Below, piece after piece: positions 4,166 to 61,967 of a stretch of DNA of 64,000 nucleotides. A program made the translations under genes and the position numbers. The notes beneath the pieces were generated by a model. The model did no database searches, was not told the origin of the DNA, and saw nothing but the letters and a program-made list of their open reading frames with translations. Positions within the stretch are counted from its first letter, which is position 1, and every line of letters starts with the position of its first letter. The DNA comes from Octopus sinensis. Taxonomy: Eukaryota. The stretch is from positions 39,804,001-39,868,000 of the forward strand of contig NC_043012.1 of the NCBI RefSeq assembly GCF_006345805.1, in the 5' to 3' direction.

Positions 4166-4944
4166 GAGTAAGGGAGAAAGCAAAAGCACATAAAGAGTGA
4201 GAGGGGGAGTGTGAGTGACTAACAGTAAATATGGAATCTAATTGTAAACGATAAAAACTAAACAAAAACTATACCACCACCGGCGCCACCACCGGCGCCA
4301 CCACCAGCGCCACCACCATCCCACAAAAAATAATTACTAAAAAGAAACTTTTTCTCCCCCTCCCCACACATCCCCCAAACCTAATAATTATTAATTGTTA
4401 TTAATTAAGCAGAATTCGAGGAATATTCAATATATATTTTAATGTTGTTTTTTTTATCTCATAGGAGAGTCAATCCTAATCTCCCCAGACTCGTGAGCCA
4501 ATTAAGCAATTACTCCGTTACGTTAATGAATTAAAGAAATGAAATTTGGTTTTCGTTTATAAATTTTTGTTTTGGATGGGATTGGGGTGGGTGGGTTGTG
4601 TGCATGTGTTCGTTCGCTGTGTGTGTATGTGTTTGTATAAGTTTTTCTGTGTTTGTGTGTGTGTGTGTATGTGTGAGAGTGAGTTTCTTATTGTGTGCAT
4701 GTGTGTGTGTGTGTGCGTGTTTGTGTGTGTCCTTGTTTGTCGTAATCCAAAATAGAGTGTGGGAGGGGGAAGAAACGACGATAAAAGGTAGGGGGGGAGC
4801 GGAAGAACAAAAACGAGAAACAGGAAGATGATGACGAAGAAAAAGTGCGGGATGATAATTAAAAGTTAGATATGTTTATAAGATTAGTGTTTATTTCTTA
4901 TCATAATAATAATAACAGTCGTCATGGCCGTGGTCGCCAACATC

Positions 4945-5425
4945 GTCGTCGTCGTCAGCATATTAGCCGTCATCGTCGTCGTCAGCATATTAGCCGTCAT
5001 CGTCATCATATTAGCCGTCATCGTCGTCAGCATATTAGCCGTCATCGTCATCGTCAGCATATTAGCCGTCATCGTCGTCGTCAGCATATTAGCCGTCATC
5101 GTCGTCGTCAGCATATTAGCCGTCATCGTCGTCGTCAGCATATTAGCCGTCATCGTCATCGTCAGCATATTAGCCGTCATCGTCGTCGTCAGCATATTAG
5201 CCGTCATCGTCGTCGTCAGCATATTAGCCGTCATCGTCGTCGTCAGCATATTAGCCGTCATCGTCATCGTCAGCATATTAGCCGTCATCATCGTCGTCAG
5301 CATATTAGCCGTCATCGTCGTCGTCAGCATATTAGCCGTCATCATCGTCGTCAGCATATTAGCCGTCATCATCGTCGTCAGCATATTAGCCGTCATCATC
5401 GTCGTCAGCATATTAGCCGTCATCA
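4945..5425. repeat. 27-bp minisatellite, about 18 units (AGCATATTAGCCGTCATCGTCGTCGTC)
   Basis: The CATATTAGCC core recurs 18 times. Units are mostly 27 bp with a few shorter ones; the array is built on a (GTC/ATC)n background. Confidence 0.95.
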
Positions 5426-5584
5426 TCTTCGACACCGTCGTCTCCCTCCCCATCGTTATAATCATCGTTACCAATATTATCGCAGGTTTATCTCCATATC
5501 CAGAGTCGTCATTTATCTTCACTATTTAGAATTATTATTAAAACTTCGTTATTAGTAGTATCGTTAGTTACATCTATTTAAGTT

Positions 5585-12184: not shown

Positions 12185-12530
12185 CTTTCTTTTATGCTTA
12201 TACTTGTTTCAGACATGTCTGGCCATACTGGGACAACGCCTTGAACGATTTTAATTGACCGATTTTTTAAAGCCTTAAGCTATCGGTCTCTCTTGTGAAA
12301 TGGTGATGAGGGGAGAAACAAAGACACACGCATTGATATATATATATACATATAGAAATATATATATAACACGGGCTTCTTTCAGTTTCCGTCTACCAAA
12401 TCCACTCACAAGGTTTTAGTCGACTCGAGGCTATAGTAGAAGACACTTGTCTAAGATGTCACGACGTGGGACAGAACCCAAAAACATGTGGTTGGGAAGC
12501 AAGCTTCTTACGACAGAGCCACACTCGAGC
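12185..12530 (-). mobile_element. SINE family A, diverged near-full copy
   Basis: Contains gggcttctttcagtttccgtctaccaaatccactcacaagg and the family tail cttgtttcag. Confidence 0.8.
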
Positions 12531-12952
12531 CTATATATATATATGTGTGTGTGTGTGTGTTTATATATATATATATACACGTGCATACTTATTAACATGT
12601 GTACTTACATAATGAATAAAATGTATACACACACACACACCCATTATAGCCACAGGACATCAAAGGCAGCCTAGGCATGCAGAATATCCAAGAGGCTTAG
12701 AATGTAATTGGCGTATAAACATACAGACAGACATGCAAGCATGTTTGTGTTTACATGCACTTGGCTAAATACACACGTGCATACGCGATGACATGCATGT
12801 CTGCAAGCTTATATGCATCCATGTGCACAAGTATCAATGCATCTATATACATATATATATATATTATATATTTATTCATACATTTATATATATATATATA
12901 TATATTTATTTATATATATATTTATTCACATATATTTATATATATGTATTTA

Positions 12953-23072: not shown

Positions 23073-23233
23073 TGGCAGGAGTGGCTGCGTGGTAAGTAGC
23101 TTGTTTACCAACCACATGGTTCCGGGTTCAGTCCCACTGCGCGGCACCTTGGGCAAGTGTCTTCTACTATAGCTTCGGGCCGACCAAAGCCTTGTGAGTG
23201 GATTTGGTAGATGGAAATTGAAAGAAGCCTGTC

Positions 23234-23270
<37 letters not shown>

Positions 23271-23490
23271 TGTTTGTGTTTGTGTGTATGTGTTTGTCCC
23301 CCTAGCATTGCTTGACAACCGATGCTCGTGTGTTTATGTCCCTGTTACTTAGCGGTTCGGCAAAAGAGACCGATAGAATAAGTACTGGGCTTACAAAATA
23401 ATAAGTCCCGGGGTCGAGTTGCTCGATTAAAGGCGGTGCTCCAGCATGGCCGCAGTCAAATGACTGAAACAAGTAAAAGAGTAAAGAGAG
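23073..23490 (+). mobile_element. SINE family A, full-length, well-preserved copy
   Basis: tRNA-like head, CORE-like CCTTGGGCAAGTGTCTT, internal (TA)/(TG) tract, and tail GGCGGTGCTCCAGCATGGCCGCAGTCAAATGACTGAAACAAGTAAAAGA. Confidence 0.92.
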
Positions 23491-23909: not shown

Positions 23910-24464
23910 GAGTGAGAGAGCAGTGCATGCCATCAAAGTGACACTGAGGTAAAATATACGAAGCCCAGTATACCCATCATGACTACCCGTCTGATAAGGG
24001 TACACTAGGCACATGCATCACAACCATATGTGCGCGACATGGTGATCTCATAACAAGATAAACAGCGCATGACCTTGCGGGTGGGGCCCAGTTAGAATTT
24101 TCTTCTGGTTGGGTAACCCATCCCACTCAAAAGGTCCCTGATTAAGGGTTGTTTAAGGATGTTGAATGAAACACCTATGATTCCAGAGATGCATCATTCA
24201 GACCCCAGAGAATCCCTCTCAACACATGGCTATGATGCTCCCCCACTACTTCTGCTCGTGATCAGAGATGCACATATCGTCAGCCACTAAGGGACATGCT
24301 CAACTGGTTAAGGTCAAACAACTGACAAGCAAATCTGTGGTATTGAGCAGAATATTTGCTGTAGCCCATCTTTTATACCAAGACAAAACAATGTACATGA
24401 TAACACTTCCAATCAGTTAAGATCAGAAACCATGAGAGCCACTACCTGGTACTGCATCAGGGCA
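23910..24464 (-). mobile_element. 555-bp non-coding element embedded in (TAA)n; probable interspersed retroelement
   Basis: A complex-sequence block with sharp borders and (TTA)n on both sides, lacking an ORF and Pol III boxes. That it is repetitive genome-wide is my recollection, not shown in this window. The strand is assumed from the (TAA)n orientation. Confidence 0.55.
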
Positions 24465-24564
24465 TTATTATTATTATTATTATTATTAATTGTTGTTGTT
24501 ATTGTTGTTATTATTGTTGTTATTATTGTTATTATTATTGTTATTATTATTGTTGTTATTATTA

Positions 24565-24623
<59 letters not shown>

Positions 24624-24675
24624 ATCATCATTATTATTATTATTATTATTAATATTATTATTATCATTATTATTA
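24465..24675. repeat. (TTA)/(TTG)n microsatellite forming the Dong LINE 3' tail
   Basis: Direct reading; it abuts the LINE 3' UTR. Confidence 0.9.
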
Positions 24676-27030
24676 CTCAGTAGTCTTATTTTTATCACTT
24701 GCTTTCACTGCACTACCGAGCGCAACCTTGTGTGCTTTGGATATATGCTGTGGTTTGTTGTGATGCTCTTATTTTCACTGTATAGAAAGTGTTTTACGTA
24801 GGATATGTACAGTACCTAGTAGTGCTATTTTCTGTATGTAAGTCCTGGTGTTTTTGTTATGTATTTGTCTGAATATTTTTTATCACAACTAATGCGTCCA
24901 CTATGATAGGAATTGTTTGTTTTTAGGCTCCTATATCCCGCATTATGATGACGAAACTTCGTTTTCTGCGTGACTGGCTCGAACAGCGTACCTCACTGAT
25001 TGACACTACTTACTGAGTTTGTCCACTATGTATTAGTAGTGGACCCGCCCAATTCTCACCTGCGGGCGTCTGCCACAACCCCCCCCCCTTGAGATTTTCT
25101 TCTCTTCTTTGAACACAACATATCTTTTTCATTTCTTTTTCTTCTAACCAGAATTATTTTTCTCTTCTTATTTAGATTTTTTTTCTTATTCCACACAGAA
25201 TTATATATATTTTTCTTCAAAATGCCGCAGGTAGTACCAGTCTACATTGTTTACTGGTATCGCTGCTACATATAGCGACCTTACTTAAATACTTTGAACG
25301 GACTTATATTATTTTTCACTGTGTGTTGTTCAGTTCTGTGTTAGTTTCAATTTTATCTGACACTTTTTCTTCAGAATCTTTTTTATATACTTTTTCACTG
25401 AGTGTATATTATTTTTTACTGTGTGTATATTATTTTTCACTGTGTGTAGTTCAATTCTGTGTTGGAGTTCATGTTTTCTCAGACATTTTTTTTTTCAGAA
25501 TTTTTTAAATATATTTTCACTGTGTGTAGTTTACTTTTCACTGTGTGAAGTTCAAATCCCACCTCGGGATTTGTAACATTTTTCCACTGCGTGAGCTCCG
25601 AATCCTCGTCACCACTATATTCCGCATTATGATAACGTAACTTCGTCGTCTGCGTGACTGGCTCGAACAGCGTACCTCACCGACTGACACTACTTACTGA
25701 GTTTGTCCACTATTTATTAGTAACGGACCCGCTCACTTCTCACCTGGAGGCGTCCGCCACAACAGCTCTACATTTTAGTTACCTATTTGTATTTTGAAAG
25801 TTTCTCCGTCACTTTTAGAGAAACATTGTCATCTGTTGGTATTGATACATCGATTAGAAAGCATTTTTTGCTTGGTCATCTCTGACAACTATATCCGGTC
25901 TATTGGCCTTAATTTCTCTATTTGTATTGACATATCCCCGAGTTGCTTTCTCATTTTCTTTTACCTATTCTGGCGTGTGCCTATAATACCATTTTTTTTC
26001 TGTTGTCATTCCATAGTGTCGGCATAGCTTCCAGTGTATATAGGTCCCAACTCAGTCGTGTCAGAATATTCCTTCTTAGCCAGGACTGGACGGCCAGGGA
26101 CAATATGATTTATTGTCCCTTCTCCATCTCCACATGTTCTGCAGTTACTTGTATTTTGTTTTCAGTATGTTTTTGGTAATTTATGGTGGGAAGGCTTTGA
26201 TCTTGTGCTGCAATTAAAAATCTTTCAGTCTCTGCTTTGAGTCCTGAGCTTCTCAGCCATTGTCGGGATTTTGCATTGTCTATTTCTTTTCTGTTTAGTT
26301 TAGTCCAATATTTGCAATGAAGGGGCTTTTCTTGCCATCGTTTTATCATGATCCGTTCCAGTTTTTTACAGCTTTTGATGTTTCTTCTTTTTCTTAATAG
26401 TTGTCAGGTACTATGGCTTCTTTTTTGTATTTGTCAGCTTCCTTAAAGACAGAAAACAGTTTTTTGTTTTGCTCATCTTTTGTGGCTATTTGTTTTAGTT
26501 TTCCTTGCTTCTGAAGTAAGTATTTCTGTAGTTCTATAATGGTTATTTTGTAATAGTTTTCTAGCTGTATAAGGCCTCTACCACCTTCTATACGTTGTAT
26601 ATATAACCTTTCTATGTCAGATTTTGGGTGGTGCATCCTAAATCCAGTCATTATTTTTATTGTTTTCCTGTCTATTTCGATTAGTTCATTTAGAGTCCAG
26701 TTAAGAATAGTGTAACTGTAACTTATAACTGGGACGTCTAGCGTGTTGATACTTATCGTGTTTTTCGCATTGAGCTCTATTTTTAGTATAAATCTAACTC
26801 GTCTATAGTATTCCTTTTTTATCTTCTTTCATTTGAGTCTGCTGTATCGTATCTAGTTCATTGATTCCTAAGTATTTGTATATCTGGCTTTGGTCTAATT
26901 CTCTTATTTCATTTGCTTTATCTAGTGTGATGTTGCTACTCTGAACTAATTTTCCTTTTTCAGGATTGCTTTGGCACATTTTTCTAAACCAAATTTCTTC
27001 TTTATTTATTTGGTAAACCATTCTGCTGTC
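24676..27030 (-). mobile_element. R4/Dong-clade non-LTR retrotransposon, 5'-truncated and decayed, interrupted by an LTR element at 24931-25764
   Basis: The minus-strand translation gives YKYLG, MHHPKSDIERLY..EGGRGL, GLKAETE.FLIAAQDQSLPT, CRTC..TINHI (CCHC finger), RPDIVVRD..CFLIDVSIP (restriction-like endonuclease PD..D) and QKIALLGTVHILRKTLSIQ* (stop at 24775). A ~100-bp 3' UTR ends in (TAA)n. Confidence 0.9.
24931..25764 (-). mobile_element. Complete non-autonomous miniature LTR retrotransposon (TRIM-like)
   Basis: LTRs 25615-25764 and 24931-25080 are 150 bp each, ungapped, with 16 mismatches (~89% identity). The 5' LTR starts TGTTGTGG. PBS TGGTGACGAGGAT (25614-25602); PPT AAGGGGGGGG before the 3' LTR; TSD GCTC at 24927-24930 and 25765-25768. 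Confidence 0.85.
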
Positions 27031-27043
27031 AGTAATGTTTCCA

Positions 27044-27275
27044 AAGGCAGCGAGCTAGCAGAATCGTAAACACGCCGGGAGAAATGCTTAGTGACAGTTG
27101 GTCCGTCCTTCCGTTATGAGTTTAAATTCCGTCGAGGTTGACTTTGCCTTTCATCATTTCGGGGATCGCTGAAAGAAGTACCAGTTAGGCACTGGAGTCG
27201 ATGTAATGGACAATCCCTTGCCTGCAAATTTCAGACCTTGTGCCTTTAGTAGAAAGGATTATTATCATTATTATT
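27044..27275 (+). mobile_element. SINE family C, full copy
   Basis: AAGGCAGCGAGCTAGCAGAATCG head; tail cttgtgcctttagtagaaaggattatt. Confidence 0.85.
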
Positions 27276-39389: not shown

Positions 39390-39698
39390 AGCCCTTGTTT
39401 CAGTAACTGTGGCCGCATTTAGTCGCAGAAATTGACCCCAGAACTTACTCTTTGTAAGCACACCAACATCGGTTGTCAAGCGATAGCGGGGTAAACAAAC
39501 GCACGCACACACACGCACACACACGCACACACACACAGACACACAAATATACTTACATATATATATATATATATACACACGACGCGCTTCTTTCAGTTTC
39601 CGTCTACTATATCCACTCACAAGGCTTTGGTCGGCCCGAGCCTATAGCAGAAGACACTTGCCCACGGTGCCACGCAGTAGGACTGAACCCCGGAACCA
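39390..39698 (-). mobile_element. SINE family A, 5'-truncated and internally deleted
   Basis: ttctttcagtttccgtctactatatccactcacaaggctttggtcggcccgag. Confidence 0.8.
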
Positions 39699-40599
39699 GA
39701 GAGAGAGCTAAATCGGTCTATGTTCTTACTCGCAATTTCACTTTTTGGTCCACGAACGATTTTAATAGATTCCTTCGCGTTATTGAAATCTGTACAACGG
39801 AGACGTTATCATTGCAGTAAGATATATGTGTGTGTGTGTGTGTGTGTGTGTATAAAAATACGTGTATATGTGTATATATGCAAGCATATGTGTATATTTG
39901 GAATGCATGTATTTGTATTGGTGCCACGTTAGAAATAACGGAGGAAAAATGTAAAGTAGCAGTGCCGTAAAATATTGACTTGGTTTGTCGACTGAAGCCA
40001 GCAGACACTCATACAAACTAACGCACACCCCTACAGACATGTACCAACGCCATGTGTGCGTGTGTGTGTGTTCTGACGTTACTGTCTTCGTGACCGTCGC
40101 CAACATTTTCATCCCATAGTAATCATGATTATCGTACACAGCAGCACAGCACCAACACCACCATGACCACCACCAATATCGGCAGCAGCAACCTCGTCTT
40201 TTATCGAAAGTTCTTTTTCAGTTTTGCCTAAATGTCAACTCTTCTTCTATTTCGGGCTGAGAAATTGGTCGGAATACAAAACTGATTGTTTTTATTTCTA
40301 TAAATAACTTCCAGACAAACTGGAGATTTTTATAAATGGGCCTCACTCTATGCATACAGAAGTGTGTGCAAGTATGTATAGAGGTGTAATTGTATGCATA
40401 TATATGTGCACATAGGCGTACTTGAGTGTGTATATACCTACGCATTATATTAGCGTGTGTGTGTAGGTATATTTATGTGTGTATATATGTGGTTATGTAG
40501 CATATCAGTGTGTATGTGCATGTATTTGTATTACAATATATGAAAGGTTAGTAGAATTCTTAGACGGAAATATGTACATGAATGCTTGTGAGCAAAGTC

Positions 40600-59561: not shown

Positions 59562-60726
59562 TATAGATTTGTATTTAATGCATATAAACAAACATGGTTT
59601 CTATGACTGGGTGTTCAGTTCTTCTTAGCAGAACCTTGTAGAAATATATTTTGCTTCAACTCCTGTTGGCCTATACCTTGATGCGAATTTGATTGACTCA
59701 AACTGCTTTGAAGTCCATCGTGTGTGTGTATGTGTACCTGCGTGTGTGTATGTGTACCTGCGTGTGTGTATGTGTAAGCGTTGGTATGTTCTGCCCATCG
59801 GTAATATAGTTGTTCGACTGAAAAACACCGGTAGAATAAGTTTAAAATGAATACTGTAATCGAATTCTTCCACTGAAAACCATAAAATCAATGCCAAACA
59901 ATGGCCAGAGTTCAAGGATTGACATTCTCTTTTTTCTTCCTTTCACCGTTTTCTATCTTTCTCTCTCCCCGCCCACTTTTCTTTTTGTTTCTCGTTGCTC
60001 ACACATGTCCATCGTCCATCTTTCTTTTTTCACGTGACTATCTTTTCCTGCACTACGTCCAATGGACTGAACGTCTTCTATCACTCTCTTCTATCTTTTC
60101 TCTTTTCAAAGAAAATATTTCTCCCAGCGTTCACTATTTTCCCCTCGTTCTGGTCTAACGACCCCATGTTTGTTTTCGTTCGGCTTCTTTGTATGTCTCC
60201 ACTGTCCTATTTTTGTTCCCAACTTTGACACCCCATTAATTCAAAATTTTATTTTAGAAGTTATGGGAGCAACTGTCTTCGAAGACTCATATTGCTGTTG
60301 AATGCTCGAAATGAGGAGTAAATAGACAACCGACAACTGATGAATGAACGTTCTTTGTATTACTTGCCCTATTTTCCATATTTGTCTCTCACTGTTCGCG
60401 TATTTAACTCATTTGTTTTCGTAGTTCATGTTGGTTACACAGTTGGTGACGTCCTGTACCCATACACACACACACAAACACCTCCCACACACACACACGT
60501 ATATATATATAATTCTGACCAGTAGCAAATGAAATATACGTTTCGTAACGTTTCGGAATTGTATCACTTTCCCAAAAATTGCAACGTAGTAGTTACAAAC
60601 TATATTGAAATATATTTTATATAGTGCAAAATTATCTGATATGGAGTCCAATGATTTGGATAGAGTGAATAAAAGTATTATGTATATATATATATATATA
60701 TAATTATATATTATATATATATATTG

Positions 60727-61107
60727 CACAGGGCGGTTGTGTGGCAAAAAGCTTACTTCCCGACCACATTGTTCCAGGTTCGGTCCCACTGCGTGGCACC
60801 TTGGGCAAGTGTCTTCTACTATAGTCTCGGCCCGACTAAAGCCTTGTGAGTGGATATGGTGGACGGAAAGTGAAAGAATCTCGTCGTATATATATGTGTG
60901 TGCGTGTGTGTAAGTGTTTGTCCCCCCACCCCCACCATCGCTTGAGAAACGAAGTTGGTGTGTTTCCGTCCCGAAACCTAGCGGTTCGGCAAAAGACACC
61001 GATAGAATAAGGACTAGGGTTACAAGGAATAAGCACTGGGGTCGATTTGTTCGACTAAAGGCGGTGCTGCAGCATGGCCGCCGTCAAATGACTGAAGCAA
61101 GTAAAAT
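60727..61107 (+). mobile_element. SINE family A, full copy
   Basis: Consensus head, CORE-like block and tail. Confidence 0.88.
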
Positions 61108-61577: not shown

Positions 61578-61854
61578 CAGCCACCACATAGGTATAAAAG
61601 CAATGCTTATCAAATCTGAAAGAACTTTTTGAAATAGCATCAAATCTGCCTCGAATGACACTCAGTTCTCTTTAGAAACAGGACACATTATGCAAAACAT
61701 GTCTCCTCACAGAATAAGCCACGACCGGAACACCTTTGGAAATAGGTTATGTTAGGTAATGATTGATAAATAACACCAGTAACACAAAATGGCAGCCAGT
61801 GAACAGTCAACAAGAAACATGGACAAGCAGACGTTGAAGAAACCGAAACATAGA

Positions 61855-61967
61855 GGCGTTGTTGTGTGGTAAGTAGCTTGCTCACCAACCACATGTTCAG
61901 TCCCACTGCGTGGCATCTTGGGAAAGTGTCTTCTACTTTAGCCAAGGAAAGCCAGTCCTATATATAT

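What the first reader, a model, noticed from the sequence alone, without database searches (positions are those of the whole stretch)
24927..25768. Complete 834-bp TRIM-like LTR element with tRNA-Ser(GCU) PBS and a non-canonical LTR end, nested in a LINE
Seen: two 150-bp LTRs (~89% identical), a PBS abutting the 5' LTR, a poly-G PPT, a GCTC TSD, and a 534-bp non-coding interior with about six TTTTCACTGTGTG subrepeats. Removing it restores the Dong frame (..KM-W-SLK..TIPIIV). Known: TGGCGACGAGGAT is complementary to the 3' end of tRNA-Ser(GCU); here 13 nt pair with one G-U. TRIMs are well known in plants but only sporadically reported in animals. The LTR ends TG..TATAG (4-bp TSD) or TG..TATA (5-bp TSD with one mismatch) instead of TG..CA. 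Inference: a possibly undescribed cephalopod TRIM family mobilised by a Gypsy-type partner with unusual integrase end specificity.
Basis: partly seen in the sequence, partly recalled or inferred. Interest (0 to 1): 0.75.

Follow-up and report, generated by a model that had tools for sequence, protein, structure and literature searches.

The report
Small non-coding LTR retrotransposon inside a LINE
This is an old, complete copy of a miniature protein-less LTR retrotransposon (a TRIM) that jumped into a decayed LINE; it is a real mobile element but an ordinary kind, and its odd LTR end looks specific to this copy's lineage, not like evidence of an unusual integrase.

Summary
An 834-bp element lies on the minus strand at 24931-25764. 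It has two 150-nt LTRs (89% identical) and a PBS, TGGTGACGAGG, directly after the 5' LTR. A G-run polypurine tract sits directly before the 3' LTR. The interior is 534 bp, non-coding, with six TTTTCACTGTGTG subrepeats. GCTC flanks both ends.

Joining the flanks gives a sequence that aligns without a gap at the junction to two other copies of the host LINE, so the whole unit entered in one event. An exhaustive protein search found a second, diverged copy at a different locus in an independent dataset (LTR 80% identical, homologous interior and PBS). It is therefore a transposon family.

Both PBS versions are one CpG transition away from TGGCGACGAGG. That 11-mer is the exact complement of the 3' end of human tRNA-Ser(GCU), and two bivalve TRIMs use it.

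The relative has the standard ...CA-G-TGG junction where the window copy has ...TA-G-TGG. The non-CA end is probably a small deletion in this lineage.

The LTR is not tRNA-like, so it is not a Helenus element. The autonomous partner, the copy number and the source organism could not be tested.

Verdict: a new member of a known kind, of modest interest.

The parts
24927..24930 (.). Target-site duplication, left copy (GCTC on +, GAGC in element orientation). If the TSD is 5 bp it is 24927-24931 (GCTCC).
   Evidence: The empty-site alignment shows this sequence once in paralogous LINE copies.
24931..25080 (-). 3' LTR, 150 nt: (G)GTTGTGGCAGACG...GCGGGATATAG. Base 25080 is G where the 5' LTR has T, and it merges with the G-run.
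   Evidence: It is 80% identical to the LTR of the related copy L005:347-492.
25081..25091 (-). Polypurine tract AAGGGGGGGGG, directly before the 3' LTR. It is preceded by a small hairpin GAGA-AGAAAA-TCTC (25092-25105) and a 16-nt purine run (25096-25111) that overlaps the hairpin.
   Evidence: Sequence read directly. The hairpin also surfaced as a chance Rfam match.
25081..25614 (-). Non-coding interior, 534 bp.
   Evidence: ORFs are at most 61 aa. A six-frame search of the two LTRs and the sequence beside them gave no protein homologue. The PBS-proximal ~230 nt are homologous to L005.
25305..25547 (-). Two 121-bp tandem units (81% identical), each with 21-bp sub-units. They carry the six TTTTCACTGTGTG motifs (written on the + strand).
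25550..25566 (-). Second tRNA-complementary piece. On the + strand GTTCAAATCCCA-CCTCG matches the T-arm and acceptor GTTCGAATCCCACCCTCG of tRNA-Ser(GCU). It is conserved in L005 (GTTCAAATTCCGCC).
   Evidence: The statistics are weak: p about 0.013 against shuffles, and 5% of other window chunks score as well.
25604..25614 (-). Primer-binding site TGGTGACGAGG, directly after the 5' LTR. It is one C>T (CpG) change from TGGCGACGAGG.
   Evidence: L005 has TGACAACGAGG and TGGCAATAAAG at the same place. Bivalve Helenus-3 and Helenus-6_PiIm have TGGCGACGAGG.
25615..25764 (-). 5' LTR, 150 nt: TGTTGTGGCGGACG...GCGGAATATAG.
25765..25768 (.). Target-site duplication, right copy (GCTC). As a 5-bp TSD it is 25765-25769 (GCTCT), one mismatch from the left copy.
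25769..27100 (-). Host LINE, the part upstream of the insertion. It covers the reverse-transcriptase C-terminal region, the CCHC zinc finger and the RPD...D...K endonuclease-like domain, and is broken by stops and frameshifts.
24464..24926 (-). Host LINE, the part downstream of the insertion: the last ~50 codons, a ~95-nt 3' UTR and a (TAA)n-type tail (24464-24680).

Best explanation
The feature is an old, complete copy of a non-autonomous LTR retrotransposon of the TRIM type. It lies on the minus strand at 24931-25764, inside the 3' end of the ORF of a decayed Dong/R4-like LINE.

Inferred life cycle (standard for LTR elements, not shown here): an RNA running from the 5' LTR to the 3' LTR is packaged in trans by the proteins of an autonomous LTR element. 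The 3' end of tRNA-Ser(GCU) anneals to the PBS and primes minus-strand DNA. The G-rich polypurine tract primes plus-strand DNA. The partner's integrase inserts the linear DNA and duplicates 4 or 5 bp of target.

Shown here: the anatomy, the precise single-event insertion with a target-site duplication, the absence of coding capacity, and a second diverged family member at another locus.

The 3' LTR end without CA is best explained as a 1-3-nt deletion in the U5 end of the source copy. U5 is copied into both LTRs at reverse transcription, so both LTRs of this copy carry the deletion. Integration then went ahead from a TA end.

The LTRs differ by K2P 0.116, so the insertion is old, roughly 10-60 million years depending on the rate assumed. 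The copy is dead.
For: LTR pair, 150 nt, 89% identical, E 2e-54. The PBS 11-mer is unique in the window, sits directly after the 5' LTR, and 0.01 matches are expected by chance. It pairs over 11 nt (one G-U) with the 3' end of tRNA-Ser-GCT, the longest match among the 13 human tRNAs tabulated in PMC10359600. The same core, TGGCGACGAGG, is the PBS of two bivalve TRIMs. A G-run PPT sits directly before the 3' LTR. The empty site aligns colinearly, without a gap at the junction, with LINE copies L003 (85% nt identity) and L002; the target GAGC/GGAGC is present once there, and the protein alignment agrees. There is no coding capacity. Second family member: P0122 is an ORF called across a related copy. 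Its contig, L005-L007, carries an LTR 80% identical (E 7e-33), a homologous interior and PBS, and a different flank, so it is a different locus. Both PBS versions are one CpG transition from TGGCGACGAGG. L005 has ...ATATCA|G|TGG... where the window has ...ATATA|G|TGG....
Against: Only one other copy was found, it is partial (one LTR, no TSD visible), and it comes from an unnamed dataset. No genome of the source organism could be searched, so copy number, solo LTRs and a TSD consensus are unknown. No autonomous partner was found. The 3' terminus lacks CA. No promoter or R region could be defined: the only AATAAA lies 46 nt into the LTR, which leaves very little room for U3. Which of the two states at the U5 end is ancestral rests on two lineages and on the general CA rule.
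Confidence: 0.85

Rival explanations
1. It is a Pol III-driven TRIM (Helenus/TRIMp3 type): the LTR carries a degenerate tRNA-derived promoter, as in the bivalve Helenus elements.
For: The sense strand of the LTR has a B-box-like GTTCGAGCC and, ~36 nt upstream, AAACTCAGTAAGTAGTGT, which matches a typical D-arm/A-box (TAGCTCAGTCGGTAGAGC, written from my own knowledge) at 12 of 18 positions (sequence). The PBS is shared with Helenus-3 and Helenus-6_PiIm, and the 5' terminus TGTTGTGG is shared with Helenus-6_PiIm.
Against: Rfam gives no tRNA match at E up to 10 on either strand. At the relaxed ARAGORN setting the window yields 165 'genes', about one per 390 bp, which is noise. Alignment to 27 bivalve Helenus LTRs gives no score above the shuffled range. 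The B-box-like motif is GTATGGGCC in the related copy L005, so it is not conserved. A T4 run in the interior of the sense strand (GCATTTTGAAG) would stop Pol III before the 3' LTR.
Confidence: 0.05
2. It is a one-off internally deleted copy of an autonomous Gypsy/BEL/Copia element, not a member of a dedicated miniature family.
For: Only two copies are known. The interior is low-complexity and built from tandem duplications. Deletion derivatives of autonomous elements are common (established knowledge).
Against: The related copy L005, at another locus and 20% diverged in its LTR, shares the same non-coding interior next to the PBS, including the subrepeats and the T-arm-like site. The non-coding interior was therefore propagated by transposition. 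No gag, pol or integrase remnant was seen in the interior ORFs.
Confidence: 0.07
3. It is not a single element: either two independent copies of a 150-bp repeat (SINE-like or solo LTRs) happen to bracket unrelated DNA, or it is a local segmental or tandem duplication.
For: No other copy of the repeat lies in the 64-kb window. The interior contains tRNA-3'-end-like pieces on the + strand.
Against: Excising exactly LTR-interior-LTR plus one TSD restores a LINE sequence colinear with two paralogues, so the interior is not host sequence. The PBS and PPT sit at the inner LTR borders in the one orientation that works. There is no poly(A) or microsatellite tail, no inverted terminal repeats and no tRNA head. 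L005 has the same LTR-PBS-interior order.
Confidence: 0.02

Closest known systems
[quoted passage not shown]
   Same: Under 1 kb in total; 100-250-bp terminal direct repeats; a PBS directly after the 5' repeat and a PPT directly before the 3' repeat; a short TSD; no ORF; dependent on a partner element.
   Different: The 3' terminus is TA (or AG), not CA. The interior is unusually long for a TRIM (534 bp) and consists largely of tandem subrepeats. The biv-TRIM of Satovic et al. 2019 lacks a recognisable PBS, whereas this element has a clear one.
Helenus-3_PiIm and Helenus-6_PiIm, bivalve TRIMp3 elements (Kojima 2024, PMC10886601)
   Same: The PBS core is TGGCGACGAGG, assigned to tRNA-Ser-GCT. 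LTRs are ~136-156 nt. There is one nucleotide between LTR and PBS, and the TSD is 4 bp. Helenus-6_PiIm also starts with TGTTGTGG and ends in ...TTTA, not CA.
   Different: Helenus LTRs contain a clear tRNA-like sequence with A and B boxes; this LTR does not. There is no significant sequence similarity overall. The start TGTTGTGG also occurs in unrelated Helenus families, so it is weak evidence of kinship.
Retroviral U5-PBS junction (...CA, one or two nt, then TGG...; for example HIV-1 ...GCA-G-TGGCGCCCGAAC, from my knowledge)
   Same: The related copy L005 has exactly this layout, ...ATATCA-G-TGG... The window copy keeps the G spacer and the PBS.
   Different: The window copy lacks the C of CA in both LTRs, so integration must have used a TA end.
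Cassandra (5S rRNA in LTR) and retrozymes (hammerhead ribozyme in LTR)
   Same: Small non-autonomous LTR elements.
   Different: Rfam finds no 5S or hammerhead match in the region at E up to 10.

Membership tests
TRIM | Two terminal direct repeats of about 100-250 bp | tested here: met
   150 nt each, 89% identical.
TRIM | Total length under about 1 kb and no protein-coding capacity | tested here: met
   834 bp. ORFs are at most 61 aa. A six-frame search of the LTRs and adjoining sequence gave no homologue. The only hit of the exhaustive search is an ORF called across another copy of the element.
TRIM | PBS complementary to a tRNA, directly after the 5' repeat | tested here: met
   TGGTGACGAGG sits 0-1 nt after the LTR. 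It pairs over 11 nt (one G-U) with the human tRNA-Ser-GCT 3' end. The inferred ancestral form TGGCGACGAGG is a perfect complement. The source organism's own tRNA was not available.
TRIM | Polypurine tract directly before the 3' repeat | tested here: met
   AAGGGGGGGGG(G) directly before the 3' LTR.
TRIM | Target-site duplication of 4-6 bp, from insertion as one unit | tested here: met
   GAGC on both sides, or GGAGC/AGAGC. The empty site aligns colinearly with two LINE paralogues.
TRIM | LTR termini 5'-TG...CA-3' | tested here: not met
   5' TG is present. The 3' end is TATA or TATAG in both LTRs. The related copy L005 does have CA at this position. This feature is usual but not obligatory; Helenus-6_PiIm ends in TTTA.
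TRIM | Multiple dispersed copies (a family) | tested here: inconclusive
   One further copy at a different locus in another dataset. None elsewhere in the window. The source genome could not be searched.
Helenus / TRIMp3 | tRNA-like sequence with A and B boxes inside the LTR | tested here: not met
   No Rfam tRNA match at E up to 10. ARAGORN calls it only at noise level. No similarity to 27 Helenus LTRs. The B-box-like motif is not conserved in L005.
Cassandra / Ajax / retrozyme | 5S rRNA-derived sequence or hammerhead ribozyme in the LTR | tested here: not met
   No such Rfam match at E up to 10.
Elements mobilised by Gypsy (Ty3-like) partners | An autonomous gag-pol element sharing LTR ends, PBS and PPT-proximal sequence | not testable with these tools
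   No eukaryotic genome collection could be searched by DNA. There is no Gypsy remnant in the window. The only hints are the PBS shared with bivalve Helenus and the 4-5-bp TSD.
Dong/R4-clade LINE (host element) | Non-LTR retrotransposon with a C-terminal CCHC finger and a restriction-enzyme-like endonuclease, associated with (TAA)n | tested here: met
   The motifs C-x2-C...H...C and RPD...D...K..K are invariant in the alignment with homologues that carry RVT_1. Three independent copies end in (TAA)n. No phylogenetic placement against reference Dong sequences was done. The link between Dong and (TAA)n is from my own knowledge.

The most novel reading that the evidence does not exclude
The PBS region may record repeated read-through of the tRNA-Ser primer. 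Besides the 11-nt PBS, the interior holds a second piece complementary to the T-arm and acceptor of the same tRNA (25550-25566). That piece is conserved in the related copy and is the seed of the 121-bp subrepeats. The sequence right after the PBS (ATTCGGA) resembles the complement of the T-loop. The related copy has a tandem duplication of the U5 end plus PBS. If this is real, the family either uses an extended, bipartite tRNA-template contact like Ty1 and Ty3, or it preserves an intermediate of the route from LTR strong-stop DNA to tRNA-derived SINEs that was proposed from squid SINEs (recalled from my own knowledge, not checked here).
Probability: 0.1. Interest if true: 0.55.

Novelty: new member of a known kind. 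Interest (0 to 1): 0.3.

Why it matters
TRIMs are easily missed by standard repeat pipelines and have been described in only a few animal groups. A curated family with its PBS, PPT and termini would improve repeat annotation of a very repeat-rich genome. It would also give a handle for finding the autonomous partner. The copy shows that an LTR element can still integrate, with a normal short target duplication, after losing the conserved CA at one end. Beyond that, it is a dead, neutral insertion inside another dead transposon, and nothing suggests an effect on the host.

Tried and rejected
- BLAST of the LTR and the interior against the window found no other copy.
- A six-frame translation of both LTRs searched against 5.8 billion proteins gave nothing. 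The candidate list stopped at exactly 8000, which looks like a cap, so this negative is weak.
- A 20-mer scan of metagenome contigs gave one 21-nt chance match and no element.
- Scans of viral contigs and prokaryote genome contigs with conserved LTR blocks gave nothing.
The single-frame query then worked.
- A protein search with P0122 returned only P0122 itself.
- Looking up a window LINE ORF to identify the source record found nothing on record.
- Literature searches for the assembly and run accessions found nothing, so the organisms behind L002-L007 are unnamed.
- Tests for a tRNA-like or Pol III LTR (Rfam, ARAGORN, alignment to Helenus LTRs) were negative.
- RNA folding of the LTR-PBS regions was not informative: z = 0.4 for the 5' LTR and -2.7 for the 3' LTR, with different folds.
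- A PDB sequence search for the LINE protein gave no hit.
- Rejected readings: SINE, DNA transposon (no inverted terminal repeats), Penelope or DIRS structures (a precise 4-5-bp TSD with PBS and PPT), and chance repeats.
Full report
**What is there**

The region holds two direct repeats, 24931-25079 and 25615-25763. They are 149 nt, gapless and 90% identical, with BLAST E 2e-54. Extended by one base they are 150 nt and 89.3% identical, with 10 transitions, 6 transversions and K2P 0.116.

The element reads correctly only on the minus strand:
- GAGC | TGTTGTGGCGG...GCGGAATATAG (5' LTR, 25764-25615)
- TGGTGACGAGGATTCGGAGC... (interior, 25614-25081) ...GAGAAGAAAATCTCAAGGGGGGGGG
- (G)GTTGTGGCAG...GCGGGATATAG (3' LTR, 25080-24931) | GAGC

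The 11-mer TGGYGACGAGG occurs once in the 64-kb window, exactly at the LTR border, where 0.01 matches are expected by chance. The motif TTTTCACTGTGTG (at most 1 mismatch) occurs six times, all in the interior, where 0.11 are expected. These motifs lie within two 121-bp tandem units. The interior has no ORF longer than 61 aa.

**It entered as one unit**

The flanks belong to a LINE on the same strand. I joined 24926 to 25765, keeping one GCTC. The result...AAAATGTAGAGC|CTAAAAACAAAC..., aligns without a gap at the junction to two other copies of the LINE, L003 (85% nt identity) and L002. These read ATGTGGAGTCTAAAAAC and ATGTGGGGACTCAAAAC. At protein level the window's TKM*SLKT-(K)-TIPIIV matches TRMWSLKTKKIPIIV of the closest homologue. 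The 834 bp are therefore an insertion with a short target duplication. This rules out chance repeats, a local duplication and two independent repeat copies.

The LINE itself is decayed, with several stops and frameshifts. What is restored is colinearity, not an open frame.

**TSD length and LTR end**

The duplication is either GAGC (4 bp), with the LTR ending in TATAG, or GGAGC/AGAGC (5 bp, one mismatch), with the LTR ending in TATA. Two observations favour the 5-bp reading, though neither is decisive:
- The LINE codon at the site is TGG (Trp) in both paralogues and in all six aligned homologues. The downstream copy, GGAGC, keeps that ancestral G, while the upstream copy, AGAGC, has a later G>A change.
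- In the related copy the G is a spacer between LTR and PBS (see below).

Either way the 3' terminus is not CA.

**The PBS**

The sequence of human tRNA-Ser-GCT-1-1 ends in ...GGGTTCGAATCCCACCCTCGTCGCCA (table in PMC10359600). The window PBS pairs with its last 11 nt, with one G-U. This is the longest end-anchored match among the 13 tRNAs in that table; the others reach 3-5 nt once my script's wrongly counted T/C (really A-C) pairs are removed.

Kojima (2024, PMC10886601) lists two pearl-oyster TRIMs, Helenus-3_PiIm and Helenus-6_PiIm. Their interiors start with t/c + TGGCGACGAGG, and he assigns them to tRNA-Ser-GCT. Many PBS matches in that paper are only about 7-12 nt long, so an 11-nt PBS is normal for this class.

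**A second family member**

No eukaryotic genome could be searched by DNA, and several indirect attempts failed. An exhaustive HMMER search with the longest open frame of the LTR (window:25636-25764:+) gave one meaningful hit. This is P0122, a 142-aa ORF with E 2.5e-4 and 56% identity over 41 aa.

Its contig was recovered identically from three sequencing runs (L005-L007, 1.08 kb). It carries an LTR 80% identical to the window LTRs (E 7e-33), preceded by a homologous interior with subrepeats, the T-arm-like site and the PBS. The flank is different and is not LINE sequence. So the element has transposed to at least two loci. Copy number remains unknown.

**What the relative says about the odd end**

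In element orientation L005 reads ...CATAATGCAGGATATATCA-G-TGACAACGAGG.... About 50 nt further on, a tandem duplicate of the U5 end plus PBS reads ...TTATATCA-G-TGGCAATAAAG.... This is the standard layout of CA, one nucleotide, then PBS.

The window copy has ...ATATA-G-TGGTGACGAGG. It lacks the C, or TCA depending on which repeat is used for alignment. The loss is present in both window LTRs, so it was already in the U5 of the RNA that was reverse-transcribed, and integration took place from a TA end.

With only two lineages the direction of change is inferred from the general CA rule. The simplest reading is a lineage-specific deletion that the integrase tolerated, and not a partner with unusual end specificity. 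Ends without CA are in any case on record; Helenus-6_PiIm ends in ...TTTA.

The two PBS versions, TGGTGACGAGG (window) and TGGCAACGAGG (inferred common form of the two L005 repeats), differ from TGGCGACGAGG by the two possible decay products of one CpG. The ancestral PBS was therefore probably a perfect 11-nt complement.

**Is the LTR tRNA-like (Helenus)?**

I noticed a B-box-like GTTCGAGCC and an A-box-like stretch on the sense strand. The tests were negative:
- Rfam shows no tRNA, 5S or hammerhead match at E up to 10.
- ARAGORN finds something only at a 70% threshold with introns allowed. At that setting the window gives 165 'genes'.
- Alignment to 27 bivalve Helenus LTRs stays within the shuffled range.
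- The motif is GTATGGGCC in L005.

The element is a plain TRIM, not a TRIMp3.

**The host LINE**

Homologues carry RVT_1 and zf-RVT domains. The alignment shows an invariant C-x2-C...H...C finger and RPD...D...K motifs, typical of the restriction-enzyme-like endonuclease of R2/R4/Dong-type LINEs (the motif assignment is from my knowledge). The window copy, L003 and L002 all end in a conserved 3' UTR followed by (TAA)n, the microsatellite associated with Dong (my knowledge). Dong-R4 LINEs are abundant in Octopus vulgaris (PMC13282606). 'Dong' is therefore reasonable, though I did not place it phylogenetically. No tool named the source organism, so 'cephalopod' stays an inference.

**Mechanism and age**

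The standard LTR-element cycle is inferred from the anatomy. The steps are trans-packaging, tRNA-Ser priming at the PBS, PPT priming, and integration with a 4-5-bp duplication. Only the end product is shown here. The LTR divergence of K2P 0.116 implies an old insertion, about 58, 29, 15 or 6 million years at 1, 2, 4 or 10 x 10^-9 substitutions per site per year. The rate for this organism is unknown. I could not define a promoter or an R region.

**Novelty**

TRIMs are known from plants, hymenopterans, cestodes, bivalves and others (PMC10886601, PMC6934838, PMC3532108, PMC4558846). I found no description of one in cephalopods in the searchable literature. Repbase and Dfam could not be checked. 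Interest is modest.

The one less ordinary aspect is the cluster of tRNA-Ser-complementary pieces and duplications around the PBS. Its statistical support is weak (p about 0.013 against shuffles, and 5% of other window chunks score as well). I give it as the novel case at low probability.

Noticed in passing
window 24464-24680; L003:960-990; L002 around 1035-1050: The host LINE and two other copies of it all end in a conserved 3' UTR (...AAGACTACTGAG) followed by a (TAA)n-type microsatellite. In the window this tail is 212 bp, with AAC variants. This fits a (TAA)n-associated Dong-type LINE.
   Followed up: partly
window 25021-25044 and 25705-25728; L005 around 440-465: There is a hairpin in the LTR sense strand, GTCCACTA-loop-TAGTGGAC. 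The three available LTRs differ in the 5' arm only by transitions that keep G-U pairs (GTCCGTTA, GTTCACTA). The loop carries AATAAA in two of the three. This could be a poly(A)-signal hairpin, but three one-sided changes are weak evidence.
   Followed up: partly
L005:255-346: The related copy has a ~50-nt tandem duplication of the last ~15 nt of U5 plus the PBS (TATATCAGTGACAACGAGG... and TATATCAGTGGCAATAAAG...). The PBS region of this family seems prone to duplication.
   Followed up: partly
window 25092-25111: The sequence just before the PPT, a GAGA...TCTC hairpin then AAG plus a G-run, shares the 10-mer AAATCTCAAG with the same position in the bivalve Helenus-6_SaGl and Helenus-3_ArIr interiors. 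Overall alignment scores are not above chance, so this may be coincidence or a short shared cis-element.
   Followed up: partly
window 12370-12609, 23108-23344, 39458-39817, 60412-61083, 61691-61957: A repeat recurs at five or more places in the window. It shows up as similar pseudo-peptides (...IHSQGFGRPEAIVEDTCPRCHAVGLNP...) next to TATA/CACA microsatellites. It is probably an abundant SINE-like element.
   Followed up: no
window 4872-5555: A minisatellite gives long open frames in three frames (RRQHISRHRR..., TANMLTT..., SILAVIV...).
   Followed up: no
window 25080: The first LTR base is T in the 5' LTR and G in the 3' LTR, where it merges with the G-run of the PPT. The exact PPT/U3 border and the 5' TG of the 3' LTR are therefore ambiguous. 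In L005 the LTR appears to start three bases later, at TGTGGCAG.
   Followed up: partly
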